A program made the position numbers and the translations under genes. From positions 62,001 to 126,000 of IMG/VR virus record IMGVR_UViG_3300045974_000132: 64,000 nt of DNA; one strand, 5' to 3'. Position 1 is the stretch's first letter; the number at the start of each line of letters is the position of its first letter. The notes beneath the pieces are model-generated. The model was given only the letters and a program-made list of their open reading frames with translations, did not search any database and was not told where the DNA came from. Shown one piece after another: positions 950 through 62,195 of this stretch.

Positions 950-1108
950 TCAACTCACATGCACATCGTTCTGCAACGGTTTACCTTGAAGTGTCGAGAC
1001 AGTATTCGACCATAGCACCCAAGGAAGCGTTACATAGTATTTCATTGCTTCACAAGCTCTACGAAAAGGAAGCATCCTGTAGTATTCTTTAGTTATTATA
1101 CCAGTCAT
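950..1108 (-). CDS. small hypothetical protein (52 aa)
   Basis: ATG overlaps the upstream stop (ATGA at 1105-1108) and the ORF fills the gap: MTGIITKEYYRMLPFRRACEAMKYYVTLPW... Confidence 0.5.
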   Translation of the reverse strand: MTGIITKEYYRMLPFRRACEAMKYYVTLPWVLWSNTVSTLQGKPLQNDVHVS

Positions 1109-4694: not shown

Positions 4695-4710
4695 TATGTA
4701 TCCTTATGTA

Positions 4711-5181: not shown

Positions 5182-5193
5182 GAAAATAATCCT

Positions 5194-5742
5194 TTACGAA
5201 ACACGCTGCATCAATAAGCTACCGCCTGGTATGAAACCACGACATTGCCAAGTACCTGCCATAACGACAGGTGCTACAGACCACCACCAAGCATTGGAGT
5301 AGGTGCTAGTCACAAAGCTTGCAGAATTACCTACTTCATAAAGTGTGAAGTTTATATCTTTTGTTATTGCTACTAAATATGCACCGTACAATATAGAACC
5401 GAAAGTTAATGCTTGTGGGATATTATATTGAGCATTTGAAGAATCGTAAAATATATTATTGCCATTACCGTCATCTTGCCCAAAGACAGTAACAAATGAT
5501 CCGACTCCTCCGAAGCCTGCGGATGCTGCTCCGGCGGGCCCGGCTGGCCCAGTGGCTCCAGCGGGGCCTGTTGGTCCGACTGGGCCTTGGCTACCCGAAC
5601 CGCTACCCCCTGATCCTGCTGGTCCTTGTGGTCCAGTTGGACCCACGGGACCTACACTACCTGATCCACTTCCACTTGAGCCTAAAGCACTCAAGTCTAC
5701 TGATTTAGAAGTACCGTCTGAAAAGTCAATAATTAAAAACAT
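5194..5742 (-). CDS. short collagen-like fibre protein
   Basis: Gly-X-Y repeats; C-terminal GGVGSF...AGTWQCRG...LLMQRVS fibre-tip motif. Confidence 0.7.
   Translation of the reverse strand: MFLIIDFSDGTSKSVDLSALGSSGSGSGSVGPVGPTGPQGPAGSGGSGSGSQGPVGPTGPAGATGPAGPAGAASAGFGGVGSFVTVFGQDDGNGNNIFYDSSNAQYNIPQALTFGSILYGAYLVAITKDINFTLYEVGNSASFVTSTYSNAWWWSVAPVVMAGTWQCRGFIPGGSLLMQRVS
5530..5662 (-). repeat. collagen-like (GXY)n tract, GC-rich
   Basis: GPVGPTGPQGPAG and GPVGPTGPAGATGPAGPAG. Confidence 0.8.
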
Positions 5743-16947: not shown

Positions 16948-17265
16948 TTACTTGTCTAAGTAGGCATTAATTTCATACTTACCGCTCGGCATCTTATGCC
17001 ACTGTAAGTGCAAAGCATTGCATACCTTATTGTCGCGCTTATCGCCTAAGTCGATTGTAGCTCTACCGTCACGCCCTGTTAAGAAGCCTTCCCACGGTTC
17101 ACCGTCTTCATCTAGCAAAGACATACGAGCTTCTTCACAAGCTGCCCAAATATTATCCATCGGAATCTTTGGATAATACGTCTTACACAAATGGGAAAGA
17201 GCTTCCTTGAGCTTATCAGGAAGTGGGCCATACGTATTAGCAGATACGCTGATAAGAAGTTCCAT
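16948..17265 (-). CDS. hypothetical protein with N-terminal S-x-S leader
   Basis: Starts MELLISVSAN; 105 aa. Confidence 0.7.
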   Translation of the reverse strand: MELLISVSANTYGPLPDKLKEALSHLCKTYYPKIPMDNIWAACEEARMSLLDEDGEPWEGFLTGRDGRATIDLGDKRDNKVCNALHLQWHKMPSGKYEINAYLDK

Positions 17266-28770: not shown

Positions 28771-30360
28771 TTAAATGTTAGAACCAGTAACGCGAACACC
28801 CGTTGCGTTAATGACTGCGGTAAATTGAACACGCTTTACTGGCAGAACAGGATCAAGCCAGAAGTCGATATAAAGATCACCTGCTGCGATACTCTCATTG
28901 GTGTTATTACTTTCATCACAAACAACACCGAAGTTGTACAAGCCGCGTGCGTTCTTAATAGGACGGAGCAAACGAGTACCTGCATCTTCAAGACGGCTAC
29001 GCAGTTGTTGATCGTTAGGATCGAACACGCTATACAACAGAACGTTCTCCATCGACTTCTCGATAAAGATCATTAGGCGACGTACGGACATGTTAGACAG
29101 TGAACTACCTATGATCTGGAGAGTATCAGCACCCCAAATCTTGATACCACTGCCTTCAATCAGACGAATTGAATTAACTTGCGACTCATACAGAGCATCG
29201 CGCTTACCTTGGTCATATACAACACGAACGCCATCTACCTTCAGATCGCCGCGTGTCATACCTGCTGGTGCAAACCAAAGTTCATAGTCACGATCGGTAC
29301 GTGCATAACAAGCAGCAACAAAGCCTGACGGTGGAACATACAAACGTATATCGTTGTACTGGTCACCGATCAGAAGATCACTAGAGTACAAAGCACTATA
29401 GGAACTATCAACTGCTAGGTCTGTACGACGATAAGCAATTGCATCTGTTACCTTTTGTTGATCGGAAGGAACATCCAAGATCGCAATACAATCCATCCGA
29501 GTACGGCATAGATCATCAATAGCTCGTTGGTAGTCAGTATCAGTAATGCCACCGTTGATGAACATGTTAATGTCAATCACTTCAGGATCTGCAAAGCTAT
29601 CCAGGGCTTGAATGAAGTCATACTTGTTCGGGCGAGCACCGTCAGCACCACCTACGATTGAGATACCTAATGAAGTAGCACTGCCACCTGCATCAAAAGT
29701 ATTAATCAATTGCTTCGCTGGCGTAGCAATCAGTTCAGCATTTTGGTGATTCTGAACGATTTGAATGTAGCTGGACTTACGGTTGATCTGTTGTTCAATA
29801 TTCAATTGAACACCGTAGCCGTCAACAACATAAGCTAAGTGACAACGCCATTTCTCAACAGGCTGTGAGCTACCTGTTACATAGACTTCAAGATAGAAGA
29901 AGCCTTGACCGAACTTCGTATCAGGATAGACACGAACGTAGAGTCGTGCATTCCAGTCACCCGGATTGATTGCATAGATTGCAAACAGGTCAGTAGGTGC
30001 AATAGAAATGTCGTCAGCCGTTGCTACACCTGAAGCAAACGGAAGTGACGTATTGAAGCTACCGTCAAAGCCGATGTTGCAACCACCGTATAGAGCATGA
30101 GGTGCAACACGTAGAGCGTACATGCGGTCGCCTTCAGACAAGAAAGCAACAGCAGAGTGACCCATGAAACCGATTGTAGCATCAGGCTTGCCGAAGATTG
30201 AAATGTACTCACTCTCAGAAGTTACTAGAGTAGGAATACCTACAGGGCCTTGATGCGCTTCACCTATCAATACAGCAATAGACGTTGTAGCAGCTACAGG
30301 TGTTTGGGAGAAGTCGCGTTCTTGAACATAAACGCCGGCACTGTTGTGAACATTACCCAT
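28771..30360 (-). CDS. tail sheath protein
   Basis: SAGVYVQERD, GPVG.PTLVTS, VPPSG, WFAPAG..RG, IWGADTL, SVRRL, VCDESNNT. Confidence 0.95.
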   Translation of the reverse strand: MGNVHNSAGVYVQERDFSQTPVAATTSIAVLIGEAHQGPVGIPTLVTSESEYISIFGKPDATIGFMGHSAVAFLSEGDRMYALRVAPHALYGGCNIGFDGSFNTSLPFASGVATADDISIAPTDLFAIYAINPGDWNARLYVRVYPDTKFGQGFFYLEVYVTGSSQPVEKWRCHLAYVVDGYGVQLNIEQQINRKSSYIQIVQNHQNAELIATPAKQLINTFDAGGSATSLGISIVGGADGARPNKYDFIQALDSFADPEVIDINMFINGGITDTDYQRAIDDLCRTRMDCIAILDVPSDQQKVTDAIAYRRTDLAVDSSYSALYSSDLLIGDQYNDIRLYVPPSGFVAACYARTDRDYELWFAPAGMTRGDLKVDGVRVVYDQGKRDALYESQVNSIRLIEGSGIKIWGADTLQIIGSSLSNMSVRRLMIFIEKSMENVLLYSVFDPNDQQLRSRLEDAGTRLLRPIKNARGLYNFGVVCDESNNTNESIAAGDLYIDFWLDPVLPVKRVQFTAVINATGVRVTGSNI

Positions 30361-33714: not shown

Positions 33715-33796
33715 TTTACTTGAAGTAAGAAAGGTGTGGGACACCTTTTGAGCATCCCACACTTCTTATACAAGTAAATTAGTATTTCTACTAATT
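33715..33796 (-). terminator. two hairpins after the capsid gene (terminator and/or RBS-control structure)
   Basis: AATTAGTA-GAAA-TACTAATT, then long stem TTTACTTG..AAGAAGTGTGGGA / TCCCACAC..TTCTT..CAAGTAAA. Confidence 0.6.
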
Positions 33797-37690: not shown

Positions 37691-38185
37691 CTAAAACTGC
37701 ATATCCCGCACCTTTAATCTATTAAAGGCAAGAACATGTTTTTCCCGGTGTACATATTGGGTACTATGGTGTGCCCATTGGTGCATCTTTTCATCAGGGA
37801 CATCTAGGTTTAACGCTATTGTCACATGAGGTACGTAATCCGGATATCTATGCTTTGCACCCCTTTGGAGAAACAAGGAATGAACATGCTTAAATATGGG
37901 TGAATCCAAGATAAATACAGCAATTCCTTTACCGTTTTGCTTCCAATACTCAACCCTAGCAATCTTAGTGAACACCGGCGCCTTAGGATACGGTATTCGG
38001 AGAGTGCGTAAAGCATTATCAGAGCATACAGCTGTTACATGAGAGGTATAAGGAACACTATGGGTTGCGAAAGGTGGATGGGTATACCATACCAGTCCTG
38101 TTAGTAAGTGAGTTGTCCGGTAGTCAGGCGTAAAATGTGCATACACTCCCTTTGTACCGGTATAGTGTTTTGTACATATACGCAT
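37691..38185 (-). CDS. acb1: 2H phosphoesterase, Acb1 / T4 gp57B-like (paralogue 1)
   Basis: GVYA, HVTAVCS, LDSP...H...GAKHRYPDYVPHVTIA: two HxT motifs with Acb1 spacing. Confidence 0.7.
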   Translation of the reverse strand: MRICTKHYTGTKGVYAHFTPDYRTTHLLTGLVWYTHPPFATHSVPYTSHVTAVCSDNALRTLRIPYPKAPVFTKIARVEYWKQNGKGIAVFILDSPIFKHVHSLFLQRGAKHRYPDYVPHVTIALNLDVPDEKMHQWAHHSTQYVHREKHVLAFNRLKVRDMQF

Positions 38186-38207
38186 GGTATCCCGATCTGA
38201 CGCCAAT

Positions 38208-38673: not shown

Positions 38674-39810
38674 TTACAGCTTTCTAGGATCGAGCAAGTG
38701 TGGGCCAATAGCGGACACAAAAGCAGGCGTGTTAACAACCGAGCATTCAAAGCCCTTTGCATCATGGCACTTACGGAAAGCCAAACGTCCATCTGCTTGC
38801 TTATACGTAGGACGACCCATTTGGGTATGCTTGCAAGGGGATAAGTTAATACCCTTACCGACTACTTGGTTGCAGATAGAACACGAATACGAGGTATAGT
38901 AGAAGCCTACTGAATACGCATTCTGCTGACGGGTAAGGATTTGATCTACGAGTAAGCTATCCTTAGTACGGTCAAACGCCATAAGAAGAACAATCTTGTA
39001 GTAATTCGGATTGAACTTAATAGGACGTAAGAATGACTCAAGAATTACACCCTTGGCTTTCAACAGATTCTTGTTGTCGTGTTCCTGGTGGGTAGGCTGA
39101 CCCTTGAAGGTCTTGTACATCTGCATACCGTATTCAGGTTTGAACGACAGCATTTCCCTCAGTGAAAGTGAATCACCGTTGGTGTTGGGTAATCCGCTGA
39201 AGATTGCAGGTATAGGGACAAGAATATAATCCCTAATATCGCGGCTAATATCGTAATGCTCCGCAGCATACGGAAGCCAGTAGTTGCAATCGAGGATACG
39301 CTCAGAGTGCCCAGTGCCAGAAATCTGGGCCGAAAGTGGTAGTTCATTTGTGCCTTGTGCTAGTTTATCTAATGGTATGGGATTAAGGCCTAAACCAAAG
39401 CTTTGACTCAGCATCCCTGTAGAGGAACTAGCTAAAGCCAGTTTGTCTAAACTCCTACATAATGAAGTATCAATCCCACCTTTAATAGCGTTAGGATTTT
39501 GACCATCACTAAGAAGAGGATATCCTGTACCTGGGTTACCTGCGCCTAAGTAGGGCACGCTGGGATCATAATGCCCATGCGGTACATCAGCATTAGGATT
39601 GATAGGTTCTTCTGAGCCAATCTCACCAACATCTTCAGGATTGGCTACTTGGTCAAGTTGCTTGAACTCAAAGTAGTCACCAATTTGGGTAAGAACACCG
39701 ACAGGATTACCTTGGAAAGCAACAGTCGTAAACTTGGAATTACTTTGCGGCATTAAAGAGTAACTATTACTCTTTGCCCACGTATGCGGGTCTTGAATTT
39801 GAACAGTCAT
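38674..39810 (-). CDS. prohead maturation protease (HK97/assemblin-type fold)
   Basis: PNTNGD, THQEHD (His), KGVI, YSVG (Ser), CSIC/C.H zinc insert, FECSVVNTPA. Confidence 0.7.
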   Translation of the reverse strand: MTVQIQDPHTWAKSNSYSLMPQSNSKFTTVAFQGNPVGVLTQIGDYFEFKQLDQVANPEDVGEIGSEEPINPNADVPHGHYDPSVPYLGAGNPGTGYPLLSDGQNPNAIKGGIDTSLCRSLDKLALASSSTGMLSQSFGLGLNPIPLDKLAQGTNELPLSAQISGTGHSERILDCNYWLPYAAEHYDISRDIRDYILVPIPAIFSGLPNTNGDSLSLREMLSFKPEYGMQMYKTFKGQPTHQEHDNKNLLKAKGVILESFLRPIKFNPNYYKIVLLMAFDRTKDSLLVDQILTRQQNAYSVGFYYTSYSCSICNQVVGKGINLSPCKHTQMGRPTYKQADGRLAFRKCHDAKGFECSVVNTPAFVSAIGPHLLDPRKL

Positions 39811-39842
39811 AGTACTTCCTTAATATAGGTCTTGCACATAAA

Positions 39843-40127
39843 TTAGCAAACCTCGTATTTATACTGTATGGAAATACCGTCAGGCGATCCTGACATGATA
39901 TGACCATCATACGCTCGGAAGTTATGTAGTGTTAGATTGCGCAACCAACCAATTTCAAGCTGTGACTTATCAAGCTCTGGGAAATTAGTTAGGTATAAAC
40001 GGGCACACCCTTTCTCAGGTATGTCAACGATTAGCTTTTCAGGGCGGCTTTTGAATTGTTGAAGTAAGGGATGCTCAAGAAACTCATCCCTTAGCTCTGC
40101 TATTATTTTAGGGGTCGGGAAGGCCAT
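39843..40127 (-). CDS. hypothetical protein
   Basis: ORF with AAGGA RBS. Confidence 0.6.
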   Translation of the reverse strand: MAFPTPKIIAELRDEFLEHPLLQQFKSRPEKLIVDIPEKGCARLYLTNFPELDKSQLEIGWLRNLTLHNFRAYDGHIMSGSPDGISIQYKYEVC

Positions 40128-40135
40128 TACAATCC

Positions 40136-41761
40136 TTAAATCTTAGGTATCCACTTCGGAACACGCAAGCCTAGGTTGTCAAAGAACTCTTTGAGAACGT
40201 TCGGTGAGATATACGCATTGATTGCAGTCATACCTGTAAGCTTCTGATTCTCACCGCTACCTACACGGTGATGAAGCATTTCGCCTACTTGCTTCATTTC
40301 CTCTTTAATCCATTTCTCAACACTGGCTTGACTAGGATGTTCAGACTTCTTGAAAGGCGCGCCGCTAAGAATCTTCAACGCGAGTTTAGTACCAGCTAAG
40401 TGGCGGAACTTATGAATCGTGATACCTGTAGGAACACCCAGGCTCTTCAGATACGCATTGACAGGAGCTGCACCTAGAGGCTTACTACGATTGGTGAACA
40501 CAACGTCAGTCGGCTTCTTACCCTTGATAAGTTCCCTGATGATTGCAATCACCTTACGGTTTGTTGCAGTCGTACCTAGTAAGATGTGATGCTGCTCAGT
40601 ACCCTTCTTACCAGTGTATTTGAATTCAAAGCCCTTGCTGATAGGAAGTAACTGCTTTACCAACAGCGTACTCATACCGTAACGATCTTCGCCTTCCATG
40701 TTCTTGCTATCACCGCCGATACGAGCTTGGGTTTGATAGATTGCTTCAACCAGAGCAGCAAGCACTTGGGTACGCGTATCAAGCGAGTCAAGATCCTTCA
40801 CCCACTTAGTACGGAACTTATCAACTTCCTTCATGAAGGAAGAGACTTTATCAAATCGTGCAGCTTTATTGCCTGAAGTAAATGCAACGGTACGAAGACG
40901 CTGTGCGACATTACCTACTAATGAACAAACATAGGTATTATCAGTCAAAGGGTCATACTTCGGGTTCATCTTCACTTCGCCGATAAGCATACCTGCAATT
41001 TGCTTGCCTGCTGTCGTGTATAAGCGGCCTTGTTCGTCAATGCTCCCTATAAAGCCTCTAGGGATGTAATTGCAACCTAAGGTATCTAGGTATTTACGAA
41101 CAATCTTAACGTCGATAAACGGCTTACCTGACGACCGGATGAACTTGAATAGATACTTCTTATAGTTGGCTACGAAGACTTTACGCAGTTCACTATAGCG
41201 TTCAACCAGTTTAACCTTACCCGGAAGCTCACGGAAGTCACGCATTTCATTGAGAGTCAGAATAGGATCATTCCGACGCCCAGTGAGTTGCAGTACCAAC
41301 TTAATCATTCCGCCTTCAGTAGCTTTATCACCTACTGCTGCTTCAACCTCTTCATCATCTGGAACGAAGTTTGTTGCAAGCTTTGAATCACCGGTGACTG
41401 CATAGATATTACGCGTGATGCGATTCCAGGCAGGCTCACTATCCTTACGATAGTACAGAAGGCAATCTTTAATCATCGCCAACTGTTCTTGGGAGATAGA
41501 AGTATCTGCTTGGAAATCAGCAACAGCTTCTTTCAGCCGGGCACTTGCATCTGCACCATCGTTCACCGTAAACTCCATGCGTGAGCGAATGAAGTTGTTG
41601 GTGATAGTAGTGAAGTCACGCAAGATTCCGAACTTCTTCAGAAAGGGTTGTGAAGCACTCACCCATTGCGTGAATTGAGCCTTTAGCGGCAACACATCTT
41701 TTTCTGTAAGGCTGAGAGCCATAACAGCCAAGCATTTAGTAAAGTTAATAACTGGATTCAT
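40136..41761 (-). CDS. DNA topoisomerase IB
   Basis: ARIG (Arg), YGMSTL, YTGKKG (Lys), VNAYLK, HKFRH (Arg), AINAYI (catalytic Tyr). Confidence 0.85.
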   Translation of the reverse strand: MNPVINFTKCLAVMALSLTEKDVLPLKAQFTQWVSASQPFLKKFGILRDFTTITNNFIRSRMEFTVNDGADASARLKEAVADFQADTSISQEQLAMIKDCLLYYRKDSEPAWNRITRNIYAVTGDSKLATNFVPDDEEVEAAVGDKATEGGMIKLVLQLTGRRNDPILTLNEMRDFRELPGKVKLVERYSELRKVFVANYKKYLFKFIRSSGKPFIDVKIVRKYLDTLGCNYIPRGFIGSIDEQGRLYTTAGKQIAGMLIGEVKMNPKYDPLTDNTYVCSLVGNVAQRLRTVAFTSGNKAARFDKVSSFMKEVDKFRTKWVKDLDSLDTRTQVLAALVEAIYQTQARIGGDSKNMEGEDRYGMSTLLVKQLLPISKGFEFKYTGKKGTEQHHILLGTTATNRKVIAIIRELIKGKKPTDVVFTNRSKPLGAAPVNAYLKSLGVPTGITIHKFRHLAGTKLALKILSGAPFKKSEHPSQASVEKWIKEEMKQVGEMLHHRVGSGENQKLTGMTAINAYISPNVLKEFFDNLGLRVPKWIPKI

Positions 41762-41815
41762 TTGTATCACCGGTATTTGTTATAAGCGTAGAGTGTGTAT
41801 AAATGCTCTTTACAC

Positions 41816-42034
41816 TTATTCAACCTTCGGCTTAGACTTGGAGGCAGAGGCTGCGATTTCATCAACAACCTTATACATCTCCTTCTTGAAGCCCTCAATG
41901 TCCTGATTGACTAACAAATCAGAAACAGTGTTACCCCGATCACCAGCTAGCGCCGTCATAAGCCTAGAAAAGAAGGCACTACGATTAGACTTGTGCGACT
42001 TCTTCTTGCTTGTAGAAATTAATAGGATTGTCAT
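41816..42034 (-). CDS. small basic protein with S-x-S leader
   Basis: Probable start MTILLISTSKK at 42034 with AAAGGA RBS. Confidence 0.6.
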   Translation of the reverse strand: MTILLISTSKKKSHKSNRSAFFSRLMTALAGDRGNTVSDLLVNQDIEGFKKEMYKVVDEIAASASKSKPKVE

Positions 42035-42044
42035 ATAGTTTCCT

Positions 42045-43940
42045 TTATGGGTGCTGGGCGGCTTGCCCAAAACGACGTAGATCAGATACATCAATCATAC
42101 TGCAAATTAAGCCTTCAAAGCCTTCATCGCCTACTAATGCGTGCTTGTAAAATATAACATCGCGCATTTCGTTTAGTTCAAAGTTCCATACCTGTTGTTC
42201 AATAACCGATATAGTGGATTCTAAACTACAGGATATCTCAATATCGTTATCCTTCTGTACTTGAAAGGCTTTTAGAGTGCGTTCTTCTATGCTCTCTAAA
42301 ATAGACTGCTTACTCGGATTTCCTATTGCTTGCTTCCGCACATAGGCAACTAGATCAGCGCGAGTTCTACCTACAAAGTCGGACTTAGATAAACCGTACC
42401 AACGAGCATATAGGTCATTGCACGTTATATACTTTAGGTCTTTGTCTTTGTAGAATACCGGTAGAGGACTGCTATCAAAGATGTGCTGATGGAAACGCTG
42501 TACTGCCCGAATATCTGAAATATTGGTCACTACTGCAACGATACCGTCAAACTTACCATCGACAGACCTAAGCACCGACCTATATACTACTACGTCAAGG
42601 ATGCTCTTTGTTACGCGGTTGTACACTTGAGATTCATACGACTGTGCGGTCTGCCCACTAGTGAGCATTTCAAAATCTTTTTGCCGGTAGAACTCAGTTA
42701 AGATACCAGCATTCTGAAGATCGTATGTAAGTATTTGTTCTCTGGTGCGTCCTACCACTTCATCAATAGGAATTCCTATCAGATTGCAATACTTATCGTT
42801 ACAACCCGCATACTTTAAATCTCGATCTAGGTAGTACACAGGAGCTGGAATACTACTCAACAGTGTTTCCTTAAACCGCTTCATAGACAAGAGGTCTGTC
42901 AGATCAACAAAGGTTGCAAGCACGCCTTTAAACTCTTGCGACTTACTACGCAGGGCTGTGCAATACATCATCACTTCCCGCACTTCCGTATTATCTAAAG
43001 TACGAAAGTCCAACTTGTGTATCTGAATATCCGGAGCATCTTGGTCTTTTAAATCGTCTTCGATGCTATTTATAGTCGATTCCAAGTCTTTAGGAAACAA
43101 GTCTGCATTGGTCTTACCGATGAAGTCCGACGGCTTCTTGTTGATAAACGCATCGAAGGCTTGATTACTACCGATGATCTTAAACGAAGAGTCCTTATAG
43201 AATACCGGATTAGGTAGAGCCGCCAGCAAACTTAGTTGGAACTGCGTCAAGGATTCAACTTCTGATATAGCAGCTACCTGCTCAGAAGTGTCACGAAAGA
43301 TAACAAGGAATATAATGTTGTCTGGGGTTTCACTATCTACATTCAAGATGTTCGCAAACATCTCCGCAGGTAGGATATTGCCGGATCGTGTAACACATGA
43401 AACCGACTTTTTCTTATTCAGGAATTCTGTTGAATTGCCTGTTACGTAGTCCCGGTATAAGTCACGATACTCAACCATCGTAGTAGGCCGCATACTGTCC
43501 ACATATGCGATATACCGTAAAGCTTCCTCTTTAAACAGAACCGCATAGTCCTGTGTAGAATTCGAGATAAGGAAGTTAACGGACTTCCCAATCAAATCTG
43601 TAGAGGTAAATCCAAGGATGCGCTCGGCTGTTTGATTTGTACTAACAATGAAACCGTTAGCATCAATACTGATAAGCGGGTCCATTAAGCTATCTGAAAT
43701 AAGGGATACGCGCATCTTAGCACGTTCCAGTTCAGAGGACATACGAGATACGATCTGTTTAGCTTGGTCACGGGTAGAGTTTATGTCTTCCTGTAATTCA
43801 AGATGGGTTTTATCAATGCGCTCTAAGTCTTCACGACGGAGCATTGGGCGCTGGATATCGCACATAGCCTGGACTACTTGCAGACTTACTGTGGATTCAG
43901 ACGGCTTCTTTTTAAAGATATTATCTAGCCATGCAAACAT
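42045..43940 (-). CDS. multi-PAS protein (coiled coil plus 4 PAS domains, no output domain)
   Basis: Four repeats of P.PVFYKD....N..F..(G)....IG+T...G.......D[ILV][ST]D; protein ends about 10 aa after the last PAS. Confidence 0.85.
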   Translation of the reverse strand: MFAWLDNIFKKKPSESTVSLQVVQAMCDIQRPMLRREDLERIDKTHLELQEDINSTRDQAKQIVSRMSSELERAKMRVSLISDSLMDPLISIDANGFIVSTNQTAERILGFTSTDLIGKSVNFLISNSTQDYAVLFKEEALRYIAYVDSMRPTTMVEYRDLYRDYVTGNSTEFLNKKKSVSCVTRSGNILPAEMFANILNVDSETPDNIIFLVIFRDTSEQVAAISEVESLTQFQLSLLAALPNPVFYKDSSFKIIGSNQAFDAFINKKPSDFIGKTNADLFPKDLESTINSIEDDLKDQDAPDIQIHKLDFRTLDNTEVREVMMYCTALRSKSQEFKGVLATFVDLTDLLSMKRFKETLLSSIPAPVYYLDRDLKYAGCNDKYCNLIGIPIDEVVGRTREQILTYDLQNAGILTEFYRQKDFEMLTSGQTAQSYESQVYNRVTKSILDVVVYRSVLRSVDGKFDGIVAVVTNISDIRAVQRFHQHIFDSSPLPVFYKDKDLKYITCNDLYARWYGLSKSDFVGRTRADLVAYVRKQAIGNPSKQSILESIEERTLKAFQVQKDNDIEISCSLESTISVIEQQVWNFELNEMRDVIFYKHALVGDEGFEGLICSMIDVSDLRRFGQAAQHP

Positions 43941-43942
43941 GA

Positions 43943-44269
43943 TTATACACCACGCTGACTTAAGGCTGAAATGGTACTCAGCACAGCCTTCACTTCATTA
44001 ATAGCTTCGCGGATACTGATTTGACTCTGATGGTATTTTTCAATAATACTTAGTAGCATTTCGCGTTCCTCACCTGTCTTTTGGTTCAAGGACGACTGGA
44101 GCTTTTCCATGGTTTCTTTGTACTCTTTTAGTTCTTCTTTATGCTCTTTCTTGGTTGTATAGTTCTGCCAAGCTAAGTAGCCTATAATGATTAATAGCAA
44201 GGGCATTACTCCGCCGCTATTACCTTGGCCGAGTAGGCTTACTACTAGTTTGTCTAAGAGTTCCATCAT
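43943..44269 (-). CDS. single-pass membrane protein with coiled coil
   Basis: TM segment MPLLLIIIGYLAW followed by a charged heptad region; 2 nt from the PAS gene. Confidence 0.7.
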   Translation of the reverse strand: MMELLDKLVVSLLGQGNSGGVMPLLLIIIGYLAWQNYTTKKEHKEELKEYKETMEKLQSSLNQKTGEEREMLLSIIEKYHQSQISIREAINEVKAVLSTISALSQRGV

Positions 44270-44306
44270 GTTAATTATCCATTCATAGAATTACTGCATT
44301 TCCCTT

Positions 44307-44312
44307 AAATTA
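44307..44312 (-). promoter_or_regulatory. TAATTT candidate promoter for the membrane/PAS pair
   Basis: Lies between the terminator at 44346-44373 and the start at 44269. Confidence 0.45.
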
Positions 44313-44345
44313 GTAACCCACTATTTTTACCGTAAGTACAAATGG

Positions 44346-44373
44346 AAAGAGCTACCCAAAAGGATAGCTCTTT
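44346..44373 (-). terminator. terminator hairpin
   Basis: AAAGAGCTA/TAGCTCTTT inverted repeat. Confidence 0.65.
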
Positions 44374-44382
44374 ATGCACAAC

Positions 44383-44775
44383 TTATTGCGGTTGTTGATT
44401 TGATCTAGGTAGCGCGGTTTCAAGTTCTTGTTGCTGGCGTTGGTATCGACGATATTGAGCATCCTCAATAGGAGATAGGGCGCCACCTTGACCCCGTTTA
44501 GCATCAAGTTCAAACAACTTATCATCAACCAACTGTTTGCGTAACAGAATACCTTGATTTTGAAGTTCCTGCGTTTGCTTTTGAATTATTTGCTGGGTCT
44601 GCTTTTGATAGCTCTCAAAGTCAGCCGCAAGCACATAGCGGGAATCAACTGTAAGGAAGGCTCCGATTATTGCCCCTATAACGCTGATAGAACTAAGGAC
44701 GATCTTAACGGTACGTCCTAGTGCTACCACTTCCTCAGTATCGGATGTATTAGCTTTAGCAACCACGATGTTCAC
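44383..44775 (-). CDS. single-pass membrane protein with Gln-rich coiled coil
   Basis: TM segment IVLSSISVIGAIIGAFLTV followed by a coiled coil; start uncertain. Confidence 0.65.
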   Translation of the reverse strand: MNIVVAKANTSDTEEVVALGRTVKIVLSSISVIGAIIGAFLTVDSRYVLAADFESYQKQTQQIIQKQTQELQNQGILLRKQLVDDKLFELDAKRGQGGALSPIEDAQYRRYQRQQQELETALPRSNQQPQ

Positions 44776-44822: not shown

Positions 44823-45344
44823 CTATAGTTTAACGCCTTTATTCAACCATTGTTTAAACGCATCCCTATTCTCAACATGGCGGGCACGATACCCAATGAA
44901 CTGTAATTGAACAGGGAGTTCTTTAACACCTAACTTCTTTAAAGCAAGAGTACGGGCACGCCCTTCATGTCCTACAAACATTGGTACGCCTTCTTCGTTC
45001 TCAACAAAGAGATCAATGTTAATATCAAGAAAGGGACTTGCAATACTCTCACCTTGCTTCAGAAGATCAACCATCTGATAAGAGTCTCGATCACGCTTAT
45101 CTATGTCCGGTAAGGCATATAATAGAGTGTCGATATTCATAATAGCCATGCAACCCTTGTACAGCACATTTTGGTTGTTGGGCGTATTCCCTAAGCCGTC
45201 TTTATTATCAATGACAAACCATCCGTGCATACCTTTGAGCTTATATACACCTTCAGCATGTTTAAGACTAAACTCAGACAGACGGTCTACATCATCCGGT
45301 GGATATATTCTACCTTCTTTGCTTATGGATATGTAGAGTTCCAT
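44823..45344 (-). CDS. ParB/Srx-like domain protein with S-x-S leader
   Basis: IASPFL...GHEGRART.AL..LG...LPV; starts MELYISISKE. Confidence 0.6.
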   Translation of the reverse strand: MELYISISKEGRIYPPDDVDRLSEFSLKHAEGVYKLKGMHGWFVIDNKDGLGNTPNNQNVLYKGCMAIMNIDTLLYALPDIDKRDRDSYQMVDLLKQGESIASPFLDINIDLFVENEEGVPMFVGHEGRARTLALKKLGVKELPVQLQFIGYRARHVENRDAFKQWLNKGVKL

Positions 45345-45345
45345 A

Positions 45346-46578
45346 TTAATACCTCATTCCATTACGTATGCTGCGCCGCATTGACCTAATGTCCTGCTTG
45401 CGTTCTACATGAGCTACAATCCTCTGCGCTTCCGCTCTAAGGGTTGCAAGCTGGGCTTCTGATACTTCGGTAGGTGGCAATTCATGGAACCACTCATTAG
45501 GAACTATGTCAAAGCGAGAAGAGGTAGCACCTATACGTATAAACGTCCACCGCTTACCGGCCCTGTCATTAGGACATACTATCATACCCTTAATCCAGGT
45601 CTTAGTATCTGGGTGATACCATTGAGCAAGACGCATATTAGAAGGACGGATAGCACGAGTCTCAGCTTTATCCCTAGCAGCTTTAAAGTTCTGCATCTTT
45701 TCTTGAGCAGCTTGTTGCCTCTGTTCAATCTGCTTCTTCTCATCCTCGTCAAAGTATTCCATCTTATTGAACTGAGAATAGCGAGAAGGGGTAAGACCGA
45801 ACTTATACATCCACTTAGCCCATAGAGGACCGTGACCGTTATTACCTTCAGGTGCTGACTTTTCTATGTCTGTAACAGCTTGATGGGCAATTTCATGTAC
45901 GATAGTCGTCAAAGCAACATGTTCCTGGGCTTTTAACAAGCGCGGAGAAACACCCAACTTATGCTGACGCGCATACCATACACCTAGTCTGCTAGTTTTA
46001 GCTCCCATATCCTTAGTAACAATGAAGGAAGGCATGAGCAACTTATTATCGCACTTAGTCTTGTTGACCTTATTCCATACTTCAATCAGATAACCAATTG
46101 CATCGGTGTTGGAGCGAATACGACTAAACCTAAGTGGATTACCGTAAGCTGTAACAAGAGCATGTTCTTCTTTTTCTTTCGGGGTCTCTTTTACTTCTTT
46201 AACCGCAGCAGGTGGAGTAGACGGGCGTTGCTCTTTCTTCAGAACAGGTAGGCGTGTTCCGGTTCTAGCTGCTCTATCTCTAGTAGTGGGTGCCTCTTGT
46301 GCTGCAAATAGCTTCTTAGCCCTAGCAGGCTTTAGTTCATCGGCTCGAGGAGCAACGCGCTTATCAAAGTCATCTTCTGTTATTTTGTATTCGTATGTTA
46401 AACCGCGTTCGGGAGTAACGACATAGACCGCAGTCCTGCCGTCACGATAACCGAAAACATCACCTTTCTTCAATGTCAAAGAACGAGCACCTGCGCTTAG
46501 ATTTAAAGCACGGGTTCCATTGAAGGTAGCAAAGTCATAGCTCTCGAAGTCCTTAGACAAGGATAAAAGGATCTTCAT
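45346..46578 (-). CDS. SprT-like zinc metalloprotease with S-x-S leader
   Basis: TIVHEIAH...GHGPLW..WM; starts MKILLSLSKD. Confidence 0.8.
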   Translation of the reverse strand: MKILLSLSKDFESYDFATFNGTRALNLSAGARSLTLKKGDVFGYRDGRTAVYVVTPERGLTYEYKITEDDFDKRVAPRADELKPARAKKLFAAQEAPTTRDRAARTGTRLPVLKKEQRPSTPPAAVKEVKETPKEKEEHALVTAYGNPLRFSRIRSNTDAIGYLIEVWNKVNKTKCDNKLLMPSFIVTKDMGAKTSRLGVWYARQHKLGVSPRLLKAQEHVALTTIVHEIAHQAVTDIEKSAPEGNNGHGPLWAKWMYKFGLTPSRYSQFNKMEYFDEDEKKQIEQRQQAAQEKMQNFKAARDKAETRAIRPSNMRLAQWYHPDTKTWIKGMIVCPNDRAGKRWTFIRIGATSSRFDIVPNEWFHELPPTEVSEAQLATLRAEAQRIVAHVERKQDIRSMRRSIRNGMRY

Positions 46579-46587
46579 GGTAAACCT

Positions 46588-46992
46588 TTAAAAGTATATT
46601 TTCTTAAAAGCAGGAATGCTGATTGCTTTCATACAGGGTAGTGTAGTACTACCGTCAGGAAGCTTCGCTTTGTAGAATACCTCACCGTCGGCATCAAAGA
46701 TATGTCCAGTAGTTTCAGTATCCACTATTCGATGCTGATGACGATCATACACAACGGCATGAAAAGGATCTTTTACCATATCAAGAAAACCGCCAAATAT
46801 GTAGATCGTCCAGTCGCTACCCCAGTCCTCAAAGTCTTCTGCTTTAAGGTACCAAGCTATAGCCCCATAACAGCTATCCTTCGTGTAGGTTCCCGGTTCA
46901 TGTCCTGGGTTTGTGGATTTAATAGTCTTGGCTATTTTCTGTAGCACTTCTTCGGGTGTCTTACGGCCTGAAACAGATATGTAGAGTTCCAT
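46588..46992 (-). CDS. putative papain/transglutaminase-like Cys-His-Asp protein with S-x-S leader
   Basis: DSCY..A, FHAVV, IVD in catalytic-triad order; starts MELYISVSGR. Confidence 0.45.
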   Translation of the reverse strand: MELYISVSGRKTPEEVLQKIAKTIKSTNPGHEPGTYTKDSCYGAIAWYLKAEDFEDWGSDWTIYIFGGFLDMVKDPFHAVVYDRHQHRIVDTETTGHIFDADGEVFYKAKLPDGSTTLPCMKAISIPAFKKIYF

Positions 46993-50384: not shown

Positions 50385-51086
50385 TTAGATACCCGGCTTA
50401 ACTTCAGTGTCTTTGTCTTCGTCATCTTCCTTATCCTTAGATTCAGCACCCTCAGGTACGTCATCACCGATAGTAGGATCGACAAAACTGATACTAATCT
50501 TCTCTACACGAACGCCTGTGCTTTCAACCGTTTTATAGCGGCGGAACTCTTCAGGAATTTCATCGTCATTGAAGTCTTCAATTTCAGGAAGATGCAACTC
50601 TGATAACTTTACTTTTACAGTTCTAGGAGCATCTGGATTACCCGGCTTGGTAACGCCCGTCATCTTAGTCACTACTGCCTTACGCGGGTCTTTATGGACA
50701 ACAGCTGCCGGCTTGGGAGTAGAAACTTTAAGCATAGTACCTAGCTTAGTGATAGGTATTGCCTTTTGCTTAACAGGACTTGTAGGAGCCGCAGAGGACT
50801 TGCGAGTAGTAGGTTTTGCAGAAGTAAGAGTAGGTATCTTACCGTTATACTGCTTAGAAGCATTCATCAAGTTTTCAGACTTGGTGATCTTCAGTTGGAA
50901 CTTTGAACCGTCTTCTAAAACGATTTCATCGTATTCCTTATTACGCAGTTCCCGTACTCCGAATAAAGCTTTAGGGGCTAATACGTGCTTGTCACCCTTT
51001 TCAGATAGAACAGTGCGTGACTTGGCTCCTGCGTAACGCATCCAGTAATACTTAGCAGGATTAGCGGCTGAGATAGATATTTTCAT
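50385..51086 (-). CDS. hypothetical basic protein with S-x-S leader and acidic tail
   Basis: Starts MKISISAAN; K/P/T-rich middle; second KISIS just before the acidic tail. Confidence 0.65.
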   Translation of the reverse strand: MKISISAANPAKYYWMRYAGAKSRTVLSEKGDKHVLAPKALFGVRELRNKEYDEIVLEDGSKFQLKITKSENLMNASKQYNGKIPTLTSAKPTTRKSSAAPTSPVKQKAIPITKLGTMLKVSTPKPAAVVHKDPRKAVVTKMTGVTKPGNPDAPRTVKVKLSELHLPEIEDFNDDEIPEEFRRYKTVESTGVRVEKISISFVDPTIGDDVPEGAESKDKEDDEDKDTEVKPGI

Positions 51087-51088
51087 AG

Positions 51089-51583
51089 TCAGTCCTTAAT
51101 GTCTTCAACCTGTTCACCCGTAAGAGTGATCTCAAATTTCAGGGAAGATAACATGCGGTTAAGCTTTGCAAAGCACTTAGGCTTATCACCGATTTTGTCG
51201 GCAAGTGTAATGTGCGCTTCATAGTCTGGGAAGCTATGCTGACAACCTAGATCAACGTATTGCTCATGGCGAATAGCAAGATCGCGTGAATTAAGTTGAA
51301 GCACAAGATACCCTGCATTGTCATGACCCGGCCAGTAGGATAGCTTGTCGGACCACGCTTTGAATGTGAACGGTCCTGCATTCAATAGTTTGGTTACGCG
51401 AATGCTGTGAGGAGCTTCCTCTTTACTGTACATAATCGTGCAGTGTAGATCCGCTTCCTCATATGTCTTAACACCCTCTGCTTGAAGTTCTTCATTGAGG
51501 GCACTCATTAGCTGGCTAAATCCTTTTACAGGCATAACGCAGCTATATAGTCCAGACTTACCTGTGTATGTTGCTTTCTTCAT
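51089..51583 (-). CDS. acb1: 2H phosphoesterase, Acb1 / T4 gp57B-like (paralogue 2)
   Basis: GLY, LHCTIMYS, LVLQLNS..L..RH....LGCQHSFPDYEAHITLA. Confidence 0.85.
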   Translation of the reverse strand: MKKATYTGKSGLYSCVMPVKGFSQLMSALNEELQAEGVKTYEEADLHCTIMYSKEEAPHSIRVTKLLNAGPFTFKAWSDKLSYWPGHDNAGYLVLQLNSRDLAIRHEQYVDLGCQHSFPDYEAHITLADKIGDKPKCFAKLNRMLSSLKFEITLTGEQVEDIKD

Positions 51584-52143
51584 GCTGGTGCCCCTTCAGA
51601 CCCTTCATCAAAATCTAGTAGAGTTTCCTCATAGCTGCTACCACCACCTTGCCTATTAGCAGGCTGCTGCATAGCTTGTTTAAATCGTAGAGCAGCTTCT
51701 TCCTTAGTCATTTTAACAAGGTGTGTTCTATCTACGACTGCTGCCCAGAACTGAAAAGCGTCTTTAATCGGATAGGATAAGGGCAGTGTATAGTGCTGTC
51801 CCATGCGTAGTTTGCACAGATCAATTGCCATCTGACCTACTTGAATAACACCGTGCGTTAGTTGCGATGGTGACTTTTCAGCAAAAGCATCCGTCATCGT
51901 ATCATCCATGTTATGGCGATACCCAGAATACTCAATAAGTTTTGCATCAATGTCGGCATGCTCCAACTCTTTAAGCATGTTCTTAAGGAGTCGCGGATAA
52001 GCATGTTGAGCTTGCTCTGCACTAACCTGAGCCTGCCTAGCCAAAGTATCTGTCTGTATGTAATGGTTTATTATGTGAGCTACGGTTGCGGATAAGCTGG
52101 CGTAGGAAAGAATACTATTGCTTACGGAAATTAATATATTCAT
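51580..52143 (-). CDS. hypothetical protein with S-x-S leader
   Basis: Starts MNILISVSNS; THGVIQVGQMAIDL resembles the His/Asp strands of papain-like folds, but no upstream Cys. Confidence 0.65.
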   Translation of the reverse strand: MNILISVSNSILSYASLSATVAHIINHYIQTDTLARQAQVSAEQAQHAYPRLLKNMLKELEHADIDAKLIEYSGYRHNMDDTMTDAFAEKSPSQLTHGVIQVGQMAIDLCKLRMGQHYTLPLSYPIKDAFQFWAAVVDRTHLVKMTKEEAALRFKQAMQQPANRQGGGSSYEETLLDFDEGSEGAPA

Positions 52144-54214: not shown

Positions 54215-54259
54215 AACTATACCTCCTTAATACTTCTAAATTAGTTTCCTGCGTTTTTA

Positions 54260-61474: not shown

Positions 61475-61725
61475 TAGAAGCCCTCTTTGGTCAAAGTTTC
61501 AGCAATGATTTGGGCAATGCGATAAGACTGAGCATCTTCAACATGGTCATGCTCTTCAGCAGGTGTCCAATCGTTCTGCTTGATTTCACGTTCAGAAGCA
61601 AAGGGCTCAGCAAAGTGATCGGGAAACCAAACAGTGATTTCATCGGTATCACGAGGGCACGTAGGATTCTTGATCTTGATCTTTGTGCCGTAATACTTAC
61701 CTTCGAGCGGAAGAATCTCAGCCAT
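61474..61725 (-). CDS. small hypothetical protein
   Basis: TAATG coupling on both sides. Confidence 0.6.
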   Translation of the reverse strand: MAEILPLEGKYYGTKIKIKNPTCPRDTDEITVWFPDHFAEPFASEREIKQNDWTPAEEHDHVEDAQSYRIAQIIAETLTKEGF

Positions 61726-62195
61726 TATGTTGTCCGTTCAATCTGTTTTGAGTACAGTAGAGCATCGACACCTAAACGCTTAACTAGTATAAAGCCTCTG
61801 CGTTTGTAGAACTTCAAAGCACGCTCATTGTTTCGATGCACTGCCAGCGATAAGGTTTTACACTTCAGGGCTTTGGCTTGCTTCACCGCTTGAGCAAACA
61901 GCCTGTCTGCACCTCCCTTACCCTTTTCAGAGTCAAGCACGCTTATCAGGTCGATGTACATGTCTTCAGGCTCATTCGGATCAAGGACAAGCTGCCCAAC
62001 AATTTCCCCATCACGCATTAGAAGGGTGAAGTTATCCCCCTGTTCAACCCACTCAGATGCCTCTCTGAGGTTCATTCGATTAACGTTATTAGACTCTTCA
62101 TGAGAACGTTGGCGAAAAGCAACCAAGTCTTCAGGTGTCACCTTAGACACAGGCACAATGCTCAAAGAGCCGGCCAAACTTATACTAAATTCCAT
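61725..62195 (-). CDS. GNAT acetyltransferase with S-x-S-like leader
   Basis: ISVLDSEKGKGGA, LAVHRNNERALKFYKRRGF; starts MEFSISLAGS. Confidence 0.85.
   Translation of the reverse strand: MEFSISLAGSLSIVPVSKVTPEDLVAFRQRSHEESNNVNRMNLREASEWVEQGDNFTLLMRDGEIVGQLVLDPNEPEDMYIDLISVLDSEKGKGGADRLFAQAVKQAKALKCKTLSLAVHRNNERALKFYKRRGFILVKRLGVDALLYSKQIERTT

What the first reader, a model, noticed from the sequence alone, without database searches (positions are those of the whole stretch)
42045..44775. Phage-encoded sensor without an output: membrane anchor plus coiled-coil/4xPAS protein in its own transcription unit
Seen: terminator, TAATTT, a 108-aa TM + coiled-coil gene, a 2-nt gap, then a 631-aa protein with an amphipathic N-terminus (MFAWLDNIFKKK), a coiled coil and four PAS domains (PAS1 and PAS4 with inserts). 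There is no kinase, GGDEF, EAL or HTH domain, and the ORF ends cleanly with no output-domain remnant downstream. A second TM + coiled-coil gene lies just upstream. Established: PAS domains sense ligands, redox or light and normally drive a linked effector. Inference: a two-part signalling device, either PAS-gated control of a holin-like membrane protein (state-dependent lysis timing or superinfection control) or a decoy that poisons host PAS kinases/cyclases.
Basis: partly seen in the sequence, partly recalled or inferred. Interest (0 to 1): 0.75.

Follow-up and report, generated by a model that had tools for sequence, protein, structure and literature searches.

The report
Phage membrane-anchor plus output-less PAS pair
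A giant freshwater phage carries a small membrane-protein gene followed at once by a protein made only of a coiled coil and four PAS sensor domains; the same gene pair, with 0 to 7 PAS domains, recurs in about 17 uncultured phage loci of two unrelated lineages and has no described counterpart, so it looks like a new kind of split phage sensor whose output is still unknown.

Summary
Window 42045..43940(-) encodes a 631-aa protein: N-terminal segment, 49-residue heptad helix and four PAS domains (inserts in PAS1 and PAS4). It has no kinase, GGDEF, EAL or HTH. A 108-aa single-pass membrane protein gene ends 2 nt upstream. Before that gene lie a structurally conserved terminator and an invariant TAATTT box.

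New here:
- The window is part of a complete 286-kb PaBG-like jumbo myovirus from a pond metagenome.
- The pair is conserved in every related locus recovered. Its nearest relatives are phage PAS-only proteins, not host kinases.
- The membrane protein family also occurs in T4-like giant phages. There its downstream partner is only the N-terminal helix plus one PAS, or the helix alone. The constant core is therefore membrane protein plus N-terminal helix, and the PAS number (0, 1, about 2-3, 3, 4, 5, 7) varies.
- CTAATTTA is the genome's most enriched upstream motif and also precedes sheath, fibre, portal and protease genes, so expression is probably late.

Holin homology (BhlA) failed, no lysis genes are adjacent, and complex prediction gave no answer. 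Best reading: a membrane-tethered, PAS-modulated two-protein device acting late. Function unproven.

The parts
44338..44373 (-). Intrinsic terminator (12-bp hairpin, UUUU loop, U-rich tail) that closes the upstream transcription unit
   Evidence: Sequence read. dG -17.9 kcal/mol, z -5.1, 0/200 shuffles as stable. Six relatives have 9-12 bp hairpins with different stem sequences at the same place, and 5 of 9 consensus pairs show compensatory changes. The simple scanner missed it because the T-run is interrupted.
44306..44317 (-). Promoter-like box GTTACTAATTTA (core CTAATTTA), 36 nt before the start codon of the membrane-protein gene
   Evidence: TAATTT is invariant in 8 phages. TAATTTA and CTAATTT are the most enriched 7-mers in upstream regions genome-wide (23 and 21 regions against about 2 expected). 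38 of 102 TAATTT copies lie in the 9% of the genome that is intergenic. The motif also precedes sheath, fibre-like, portal-operon and prohead-protease genes.
43943..44269 (-). Small membrane protein, 108 aa: short N-terminal helix, one hydrophobic segment (about residues 20-36), Lys-rich flank, then a heptad-repeat C-terminal tail of about 70 residues with the conserved KYHxxQIS...EAINE[VI]K motif
   Evidence: ORF. 45-79% identity in 7 relatives. 63 cluster representatives in 1.8 billion proteins. Hydrophobicity and heptad tests. dN 0.12-0.24 with saturated dS.
43836..43940 (-). PAS protein residues 1-35: amphipathic start (MFAWLDNIFKK) and the conserved RPMLRxEDL segment
   Evidence: Alignment. 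Hydrophobic moment. AF2 confidence is low here. This segment is also aligned in the short T4-like partners.
43689..43835 (-). PAS protein residues 36-84: long heptad helix, among the most conserved parts of the protein and shared with all partner proteins, including the 69-aa helix-only one
   Evidence: AF2 helix 36-84. Periodicity 0/2000 shuffles. Mean identity 0.57 against 0.42-0.55 for PAS cores. hhalign to short partners.
43290..43676 (-). PAS1 (residues 89-217) with helical insert 132-167
   Evidence: Pfam PAS and PAS_9. AF2. Homologous to the single PAS of the T4-like partners.
42903..43205 (-). PAS2 (residues 246-346)
   Evidence: Pfam PAS_4 240-349. AF2.
42522..42839 (-). PAS3 (residues 368-473)
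   Evidence: Pfam. AF2. The best sequence match to a solved structure is the BvgS PAS domain.
42090..42458 (-). PAS4 (residues 495-617) with a poorly conserved helical insert 527-570; the protein ends 14 residues later, where most relatives continue with a fifth PAS
   Evidence: Pfam PAS_8 483-522. AF2. Insert identity 0.15. The extra C-terminal modules of relatives are PAS.
41816..42034 (-). 72-aa basic protein gene (net charge +5) that starts 10 nt after the PAS stop codon, behind an AGGA ribosome-binding site. It is an accessory neighbour limited to part of the lineage, not a core part of the pair
   Evidence: Internal ATG of the 92-aa ORF. Orthologues at 25-73% identity in 6 relatives. 27 family members. 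Absent after the PAS gene in L004, L015, L037 and L040. Present without the pair in L014.
44383..44775 (-). 130-aa membrane protein (strong TM at residues 25-43, Gln-rich tail) in the upstream transcription unit; not part of the module
   Evidence: KD 2.38 and no heptad signal. Orthologues only in L002 and L010. Unrelated to the 108-aa family.
40136..41770 (-). Phage-type topoisomerase IB, next gene downstream with no intervening terminator; probably on the same transcript
   Evidence: Pfam Topoisom_I 1.2e-17 and phrog_23460 2.4e-110. No terminator found. Always follows the PAS gene in PaBG-like relatives.

Best explanation
The locus encodes a conserved phage two-protein module. The first protein is a small bitopic membrane protein, probably with its heptad-repeat tail in the cytoplasm. 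The second, translationally coupled to it, is a cytoplasmic protein with a conserved N-terminal segment plus a 49-residue heptad helix, followed by a variable string of PAS domains.

The parts that never vary across phages are the membrane protein and the partner's N-terminal helix. I therefore infer that this helix docks on the membrane protein's tail and is the 'output' end. On this reading the PAS array is an add-on input that changes the state (oligomerisation or activity) of the membrane complex in response to a ligand, redox or energy cue.

The module is transcribed from the phage's own CTAATTTA promoter, the class that also drives structural genes, so it probably acts in the late phase of infection.

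Shown: the gene pair, its architecture, its conservation, purifying selection, and the promoter and terminator anatomy.
Inferred: membrane topology, physical docking, sensing by the PAS domains, and late timing.
Unknown: what the membrane complex does. Candidates are timing of lysis or membrane permeabilisation, exclusion of superinfecting phage, or a membrane-bound assembly step.
For: 1. Pairing. The 104-110 aa membrane gene lies immediately upstream of the PAS gene (1-13 nt apart, or overlapping) in L002-L010, L013, L015, L037 and L040. The window has a 2-nt gap.
2. Wider membrane protein family. It has 63 cluster representatives. In T4-like giant phages it is followed at once by short partners: 194 aa (L017), 240 aa (L038), 234 aa (L039) and 69 aa (L016).
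3. Homology of the short partners. They align to window residues about 13-120, that is N-segment, helix and PAS1. hhalign gives 78.7% probability and E 1.7e-5, with E 1.1e-4 and 2.5e-4 for single sequences. Pfam PAS hits are weak. An AF2 model shows helices then a PAS-like sheet, and all top-50 Foldseek hits are PAS domains. The 69-aa partner is the helix alone.
4. PAS number varies (0, 1, about 2-3, 3, 4, 5, 7) and no member has an output domain.
5. Conservation pattern. The N-helix (0.57) and inter-PAS linkers (0.50-0.61, three of four above any PAS core) are on the whole more conserved than the PAS cores (0.42-0.55), and the inserts are least conserved. This is as expected for signal transmission along a helical spine.
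6. Purifying selection. dN is 0.12-0.48 with saturated dS, and the membrane protein evolves more slowly than topoisomerase IB.
7. Promoter class. The phage has its own sigma-70-like gene, as does PaBG (PMC7412058).
8. The Lys-rich flank after the hydrophobic segment puts the tail in the cytoplasm by the positive-inside rule (established knowledge).
Against: - Complex prediction of the three proteins gave score 0.00, 'no answer', so docking has no computational support.
- The hydrophobic segment of the 108-aa protein is short and scores below the usual TM threshold.
- No cofactor or ligand signature was found in any PAS domain, so sensing is assumed from family behaviour.
- The helix-only partner in L016 shows that the core works without PAS.
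- The CTAATTTA class also includes an Acb1-like gene and homing endonucleases, so 'late' is not certain.
- No RNA data exist for this phage.
- Only one of four T4-like loci has a T4 late promoter upstream.
Confidence: 0.45

Rival explanations
1. Lysis-timing device. The 108-aa protein is a holin or antiholin-like membrane protein, and the PAS protein holds it inactive until a host-state cue such as energy or redox collapse is sensed, so setting the moment of lysis.
For: - Architecture (small, single hydrophobic segment, charged helical tail) resembles BhlA/UviB-type holins.
- Language-model features place BhlA clusters among the neighbours (score 0.92, 190 shared features).
- 5 of 11 family members give weak hits to PHROG 1625, and 2 to Rz-like spanins.
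- The promoter class is probably late.
- The T4 RI/RIII-holin system is a precedent for regulated lysis timing by small partners (own knowledge).
Against: - No member hits Pfam Holin_BhlA even at E<=1, and there is no hit in the genome at E<=10.
- PHROG hits are all E>1e-4.
- No endolysin or spanin is adjacent. The only free SLT-type gene is about 115 kb away.
- NCTB's 'endolysin' in the syntenic slot is really the prohead protease (by eye).
- In T4-like phages the pair sits among rII, helicase and TROVE genes, not lysis genes.
Confidence: 0.17
2. Non-sensory scaffold. The PAS domains are used only as protein-binding beads on a membrane-tethered string. They recruit phage or host proteins to the inner membrane, for example for head assembly or DNA transactions, and sense no signal.
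For: - In PaBG-like phages the pair lies inside the portal-protease-capsid cluster, next to ligase, SprT-like and topoisomerase IB genes.
- It shares a promoter class with structural genes.
- PAS copy number is freely variable and the inserts are poorly conserved.
- No cofactor motif was detected.
Against: - In T4-like phages the pair is not in a morphogenesis cluster.
- PaBG, NCTB and Lu11 have the same head and DNA genes without the pair.
- The strongly conserved inter-PAS linkers look like signalling helices.
Confidence: 0.2
3. Decoy or sponge. The output-less PAS array either heterodimerises with host PAS-containing kinases or cyclases to jam host signalling, or soaks up a small host signalling or immune molecule.
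For: - PAS domains commonly dimerise, and output-less PAS proteins can act in trans on kinases (Caulobacter MopJ, PMC4432633).
- Anti-CBASS Acb1-like genes lie in the same region (window 37691..38206; relatives).
- Multiple binding domains would raise capacity.
Against: - The nearest cellular PAS proteins are only 20-27% identical at E 1e-17 or weaker. A mimic of a specific host interface would be expected to be closer.
- The conserved membrane partner and N-terminal helix have no role in this model.
- The minimal members have one PAS or none.
- Probable late expression fits poorly with host takeover or immune evasion.
Confidence: 0.1
4. Decaying remnant of a captured host sensor kinase that lost its output domain and is on its way out.
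For: - The window copy is shorter than most relatives, lacking a fifth PAS.
Against: - All 12 full-length family members examined lack outputs.
- dN is far below the saturated dS.
- Only 10 nt separate the stop codon from the next gene, so there is no remnant.
- The pair is conserved across two phage lineages.
Confidence: 0.02

Closest known systems
VqmA-Phage of vibriophage VP882 (phage-encoded PAS receptor; PMC8284805)
   Same: It is a phage-encoded PAS-domain protein that lets a phage read a chemical cue and time a late decision.
   Different: VqmA has one PAS fused to a DNA-binding HTH output, is soluble, and belongs to a temperate plasmid-like phage. Here there are four PAS domains, no output domain and a dedicated membrane partner, in lytic-type giant phages. 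No sequence relationship was detected: no phage record matched at all.
Multi-PAS regulators that signal by protein-protein contact through helical linkers: PpsR/AppA and NifL-NifA
   Same: Tandem PAS domains are joined by conserved helices. PpsR (4hh2) and NifL (9qq6) are among the best structural and sequence matches. In both, the PAS array signals through contacts with a separate partner protein (AppA for PpsR, NifA for NifL); only in NifL is that contact the output itself, since PpsR also binds DNA.
   Different: PpsR ends in an HTH and NifL in a kinase-like domain. Both are soluble and cellular. In the phage protein the conserved end is the N-terminus and the presumed partner is a membrane protein. 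Similarity is at fold level only, 11-13% identity.
Output-less PAS proteins of bacteria and archaea (e.g. Caulobacter MopJ, PMC4432633; PAS-only clusters in the ESM Atlas)
   Same: They have no recognisable effector domain. PAS-only clusters of 150-650 aa are the nearest neighbours by language-model features. MopJ acts in trans on other proteins.
   Different: None shares the N-terminal segment and helix, and none is known to be paired with this membrane protein family. No cellular genome copy of the membrane gene was found in a pattern scan of 185,579 species genomes, a scan that would find close relatives only.
BhlA/UviB holin-like proteins (Pfam PF10960) and Rz-type i-spanins
   Same: They are small phage proteins with one N-terminal hydrophobic segment and a charged helical tail. 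There are weak feature-level and PHROG resemblances.
   Different: The Pfam model does not match any family member. There is no adjacent endolysin and no o-spanin lipoprotein partner. The downstream gene is a PAS protein.
T4 RI/RIII antiholin-holin lysis-inhibition system
   Same: Small phage membrane and cytoplasmic proteins bind each other to set the time of a late event in response to a signal (own knowledge).
   Different: There is no sequence similarity and no PAS domain, and the T4 signal is superinfection sensed in the periplasm. The comparison is an analogy, not a membership claim.

Membership tests
PAS domain superfamily | Significant match to PAS profile HMMs above the curated threshold | tested here: met
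   PAS_4 111.7 bits (cut-off 23.1), PAS 94.2 (22.6), PAS_9 80.2 (27) and PAS_8 45.3 (21.8), in four separate stretches.
PAS domain superfamily | Five-stranded antiparallel beta-sheet flanked by helices | tested here: met
   The AF2 model shows four such units at pLDDT mostly 75-90. Foldseek top hits are DosP, PpsR, LOV-HK, MmoS, FixL and HIF/ARNT, all at probability 1.00.
PAS domain superfamily | Bound cofactor or ligand (haem, flavin, other) | not testable with these tools
   No diagnostic motif was seen. Sequence matches to FixL and BvgS PAS domains are generic. This needs spectra or native MS.
Sensor histidine kinase | HisKA/DHp and HATPase_c domains | tested here: not met
   Absent from the window protein and from all 11 close family members (precomputed Pfam). 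They are present only in distant cellular hits.
Diguanylate cyclase / phosphodiesterase sensors | GGDEF or EAL domain | tested here: not met
   No hit. The sub-threshold 'Diguanyl_cycl_sensor' hit is itself a PAS-like sensor domain, not a catalytic one.
One-component PAS-HTH regulators (VqmA type) | DNA-binding HTH domain | tested here: not met
   The only hit is HTH_55 at E 0.078 and 13.7 bits against a cut-off of 27.1, and it lies inside PAS2.
BhlA/UviB holin family (PF10960) | Match to the Holin_BhlA profile | tested here: not met
   No match for any of 11 family members at E<=1, and none in the whole phage genome at E<=10.
Holins (functional class) | Small membrane protein encoded next to an endolysin and forming lethal membrane lesions | tested here: inconclusive
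   Small size and a hydrophobic segment are met. Adjacency to an endolysin is not met. Lesion formation is not testable here.
Rz-type i-spanin | N-terminal TM, periplasmic coiled coil, and a cognate o-spanin lipoprotein gene embedded or adjacent | tested here: not met
   PHROG 4349 and 739 hits at E 0.004-0.008 in only 2 of 11 members. The adjacent gene is the PAS protein, which has no lipobox. The Lys-rich flank predicts a cytoplasmic tail.
The new pair itself (small TM protein + helix-PAS partner) | Membrane-protein gene immediately followed by a gene whose product starts with the conserved N-segment and heptad helix | tested here: met
   Seen in the window and in 16 other loci, from both PaBG-like and T4-like phages. 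Homology of the N-terminal region is shown.

The most novel reading that the evidence does not exclude
Giant phages carry a previously undescribed class of split sensor. A PAS array of evolvable length (0-7 domains) has as its only output an N-terminal helix, which controls a dedicated small membrane protein. This would let the phage couple a late membrane event (lysis, exclusion or assembly) to the physiological state of the host, an 'input-only' signalling protein whose effector is encoded as a separate gene.
Probability: 0.3. Interest if true: 0.78.

Novelty: new variant of a known kind. Interest (0 to 1): 0.62.

Why it matters
Phages are known to sense cues through a handful of systems: arbitrium, VqmA-Phage, and lysis inhibition. 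A conserved, purely phage-borne PAS module with a dedicated membrane partner would add a new way for lytic giant phages to read host state.

The natural series of partners, from helix alone to seven PAS domains, is a ready-made dissection of which part does what. It also gives a testable function to a widespread family of small phage membrane proteins (63 clusters) that so far has no annotation. Finally, it yields a defined promoter (CTAATTTA) and terminator for an uncultured jumbo-phage group.

Tried and rejected
1. Frameshift-split gene. I first suspected that the 108-aa and 631-aa ORFs were one split gene, because relatives are about 108 aa longer. This is rejected: the extra length is C-terminal PAS modules, and the 108-aa protein does not align to them.
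2. Lysis-cassette lead from NCTB's 'endolysin' in the syntenic slot. Rejected: that protein is the prohead-protease homologue.
3. BhlA holin membership. Tested and failed.
4. Complex prediction of PAS + 72-aa + 108-aa proteins. Score 0.00, controls not run, so this is no evidence either way.
5. Cultured relatives. There is no DNA or protein match to any of 50,697 phage records for the PAS protein, the T4-like membrane protein or the short partner. PaBG, NCTB and Lu11 lack the pair.
6. Transcript evidence. Only three pond DNA runs hold the locus and no RNA run does.
7. T4 late promoter upstream of the T4-like pairs. Exact TATAAATA occurs in only 1 of 4 loci, so the test is inconclusive.
8. Cofactor clues from solved PAS structures. 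Only generic matches.
9. The 72-aa protein as a third core component. Rejected: it is absent in L004, L015, L037 and L040, and present without the pair in L014.
10. Atlas search for the 72-aa protein. Scores of 0.77 or less, uninformative.
The closer alignment found no cellular copy.


Full report
**Setting.** The window is bases 62001-126000 of a complete 286,393-bp virus record with direct terminal repeats, recovered from a pond metagenome. Nearly all window genes are on the minus strand. PHROG and Pfam scans identify terminase, portal, prohead protease, tail sheath, tube, baseplate, NAD-ligase, an SprT-like protein and a phage-type topoisomerase IB. The nearest deposited phages are Phage NCTB, Pseudomonas phages PaBG and Lu11, and phiRSL1, at only 30-45% protein identity. 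This is therefore an uncultured PaBG-like jumbo myovirus.

**The observation.**
- The 631-aa protein has four PAS stretches far above Pfam thresholds and no kinase, GGDEF, EAL or credible HTH domain.
- An AlphaFold2 model built on 11 homologues (mean pLDDT 75) gives a low-confidence N-terminus (1-35), a long helix (36-84), PAS1 (89-217, helical insert 132-167), PAS2 (246-346), PAS3 (368-473) and PAS4 (495-617, insert 527-570).
- Structure matches are DosP, PpsR, LOV-HK, MmoS, FixL and NifL.
- Heptad periodicity is significant in helix 36-84 and in the tail of the 108-aa protein, but not in the 130-aa protein. The first 11 residues are amphipathic (94th percentile). The hydrophobic segment of the 108-aa protein is short.
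- The stop codon of the 108-aa gene and the ATG of the PAS gene are 2 nt apart.

**Signals.**
- Upstream of the 108-aa gene lies a perfect 12-bp hairpin with a U-rich tail (44338..44373, dG -17.9, z -5.1).
- Six relatives carry hairpins of 9-12 bp with different stem sequences at the same place, so the structure is what is conserved.
- About 25 nt further downstream lies GTTACTAATTTA, whose TAATTT core is invariant in eight phages.
- An unbiased k-mer count over all upstream regions of the genome ranks TAATTTA and CTAATTT first (23 and 21 regions against about 2 expected). 38 of 102 TAATTT copies lie in the 9% of the genome that is non-coding.
- The motif precedes 22 genes, including a tail sheath, a fibre-like protein, the portal operon, the prohead protease, three homing endonucleases and an Acb1-like gene. 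I read it as the phage's late or morphogenesis-class promoter.
- The phage has its own sigma-70-like gene, as reported for PaBG (PMC7412058).
- No terminator follows the PAS gene. A 72-aa gene starts 10 nt later and topoisomerase IB follows. The unit is therefore defined at its 5' end only.

**Relatives of the PAS protein.**
- A search of 5.8 billion proteins found ten family members at 30-68% identity, plus one 352-aa fragment. All are metagenomic and all are PAS-only. Lengths are 628-966 aa (one, 706 aa, lacks its N-terminus).
- Cellular kinases and cyclases appear only from E 1e-17 downward, at 20-27% identity.
- The longer relatives have one to three additional C-terminal PAS domains. The window copy and P0003 have four.
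- My initial idea, that the 108-aa ORF is a frameshifted N-terminus of the PAS gene, was wrong.
- No deposited phage has a homologue.

**Conservation of the pair.**
- In every relative whose context could be fetched (L002-L010, L013, L015, L037, L040), a 103-110 aa gene lies immediately upstream of the PAS gene. In the PaBG-like loci the pair sits upstream of topoisomerase IB and, wherever the upstream flank was recovered, downstream of the NAD-ligase/SprT region.
- The small protein is better conserved (45-79% identity) than the PAS protein.
- Synonymous sites are saturated while dN is 0.12-0.24 for the small protein and 0.25-0.48 for the PAS protein. Both genes are therefore under purifying selection.
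- PaBG, NCTB and Lu11 have the flanking genes without the pair.
- The 130-aa upstream gene is present only in the two closest relatives and is unrelated to the 108-aa family.
- The 72-aa basic gene is present in eight loci but absent in four, and it occurs without the pair in L014. It is a neighbour, not a core part.

**The key result.**
- A profile of the small protein run against 1.84 billion cluster representatives found 63 families.
- Contexts of distant members show a different kind of phage, with rIIA/rIIB, TROVE, an XPD-like helicase and DHFR; one is a complete 345-kb genome. In these phages the small gene is again followed at once by a partner, but a short one: 194, 234 or 240 aa, and in one case 69 aa.
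- These partners align to window residues about 13-120, that is the N-terminal segment, the helix and PAS1. hhalign gives 78.7% probability at E 1.7e-5, and E 1.1e-4 and 2.5e-4 for single sequences.
- They give weak Pfam PAS hits.
- The 194-aa protein models as helices followed by a PAS-like sheet, and its 50 best structural matches are all PAS domains.
- The 69-aa partner corresponds to the helix alone.
- Other variants are a 547-aa, three-PAS partner at 25% identity in L015 and a 453-aa partner in L040.
- The constant core is therefore the membrane protein plus the partner's N-terminal helix, with 0, 1, about 2-3, 3, 4, 5 or 7 PAS domains appended.
- Within the close family, the helix and most inter-PAS linkers are at least as conserved as any PAS core, and the inserts are the least conserved parts.

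**Mechanism.**
- The simplest reading is that the N-terminal helix is the business end and binds the cytoplasmic heptad tail of the membrane protein. The Lys-rich flank after the hydrophobic segment puts that tail inside the cell by the positive-inside rule.
- The PAS array then modulates this complex in response to a cue, late in infection.
- What the complex does is open. The holin idea rests on architecture and on weak feature-level hints. It failed the one homology test available and has no support from gene neighbourhood.
- The decoy idea does not explain the membrane partner and lacks any close cellular template.
- A scaffold role is possible.
- The attempt to model the complex gave no answer.

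**Novelty.**
- Full-text searches found no paper linking PAS domains to jumbo, huge or giant phages. A comparative survey of 224 jumbo phages does not mention PAS.
- The known phage PAS receptor, VqmA-Phage, has an HTH output (PMC8284805).
- Output-less PAS proteins are common in cells (MopJ, PMC4432633), so the domain logic is not new.
- What is new is the dedicated membrane partner, the N-terminal 'output', the phage-only distribution (no cellular copy found) and the graded PAS series.
- I rate it a new variant of a known kind, with interest 0.62.

Noticed in passing
window 1105..2037, 16948..17265, 44823..45344, 45346..46578, 46588..46992, 50385..51086, 51580..52143, 61725..62195 (all - strand): Thirteen of 394 ORFs in the genome, eight of them in the window, begin with the same signature M-[E/K]-hydrophobic-x-hydrophobic-S-hydrophobic-S (for example MELYISISK, MKILLSLSK). 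Only 2 of 1,661 internal Met positions show it. Orthologues of the 72-aa protein carry it too. It may be a shared N-terminal domain (the SprT-like protein hits Pfam KMPT-N there) or a common targeting or processing signal.
   Followed up: partly
whole genome G000; window examples 39839..39850, 54237..54248, 33775..33786 (- strand): Two promoter-like motifs recur upstream of genes. CTAATTTA precedes 22 genes, mostly structural plus homing endonucleases. ACTGTAAATA precedes 9 genes, including SSB and the tail tube. These are probably two temporal classes read with the phage's own sigma factor (G000 about 201.6 kb).
   Followed up: partly
window 37691..38206 (-): An Acb1-like (anti-CBASS phosphodiesterase) gene, Pfam PF23474 at E 1e-9, sits behind an ATAATTTA box. 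Relatives carry two Acb1 genes flanking the ligase-to-protease region.
   Followed up: no
window 28771..30360 (-) and G000:C1:24580-26274 (+): Two tail-sheath paralogues occur in one genome. Both match phrog_23 strongly (7e-85 and 2e-92).
   Followed up: no
L012 5145..5933 (Phage NCTB, BN7874_230): The gene annotated 'Phage endolysin' in NCTB shares long conserved blocks with the window's prohead protease (38674..39810, phrog_18299). By eye it looks mis-annotated.
   Followed up: partly
L016 5189..5738, L017 6001..6857, L038 about 4500..5530, L039 4456..5416: In the T4-like phages the membrane-gene/PAS-gene pair lies on the strand opposite to all flanking genes, as an isolated two-gene unit. 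L038 and L039 share a conserved upstream block, and L016 has a T4 late-type TATAAATA at -65.
   Followed up: partly
G000:C1:220207-220869 (+), outside the window: The only free lysozyme-type gene is a 220-aa SLT-domain protein whose N-terminus looks like a lipoprotein signal (LQAC). No obvious holin or spanin lies next to it.
   Followed up: no
window 44823..45344 (-): A 173-aa protein, conserved in relatives, carries a GHEGRAR motif reminiscent of ParB/sulfiredoxin-type domains. It gives no Pfam or PHROG hit, so the resemblance is untested.
   Followed up: no
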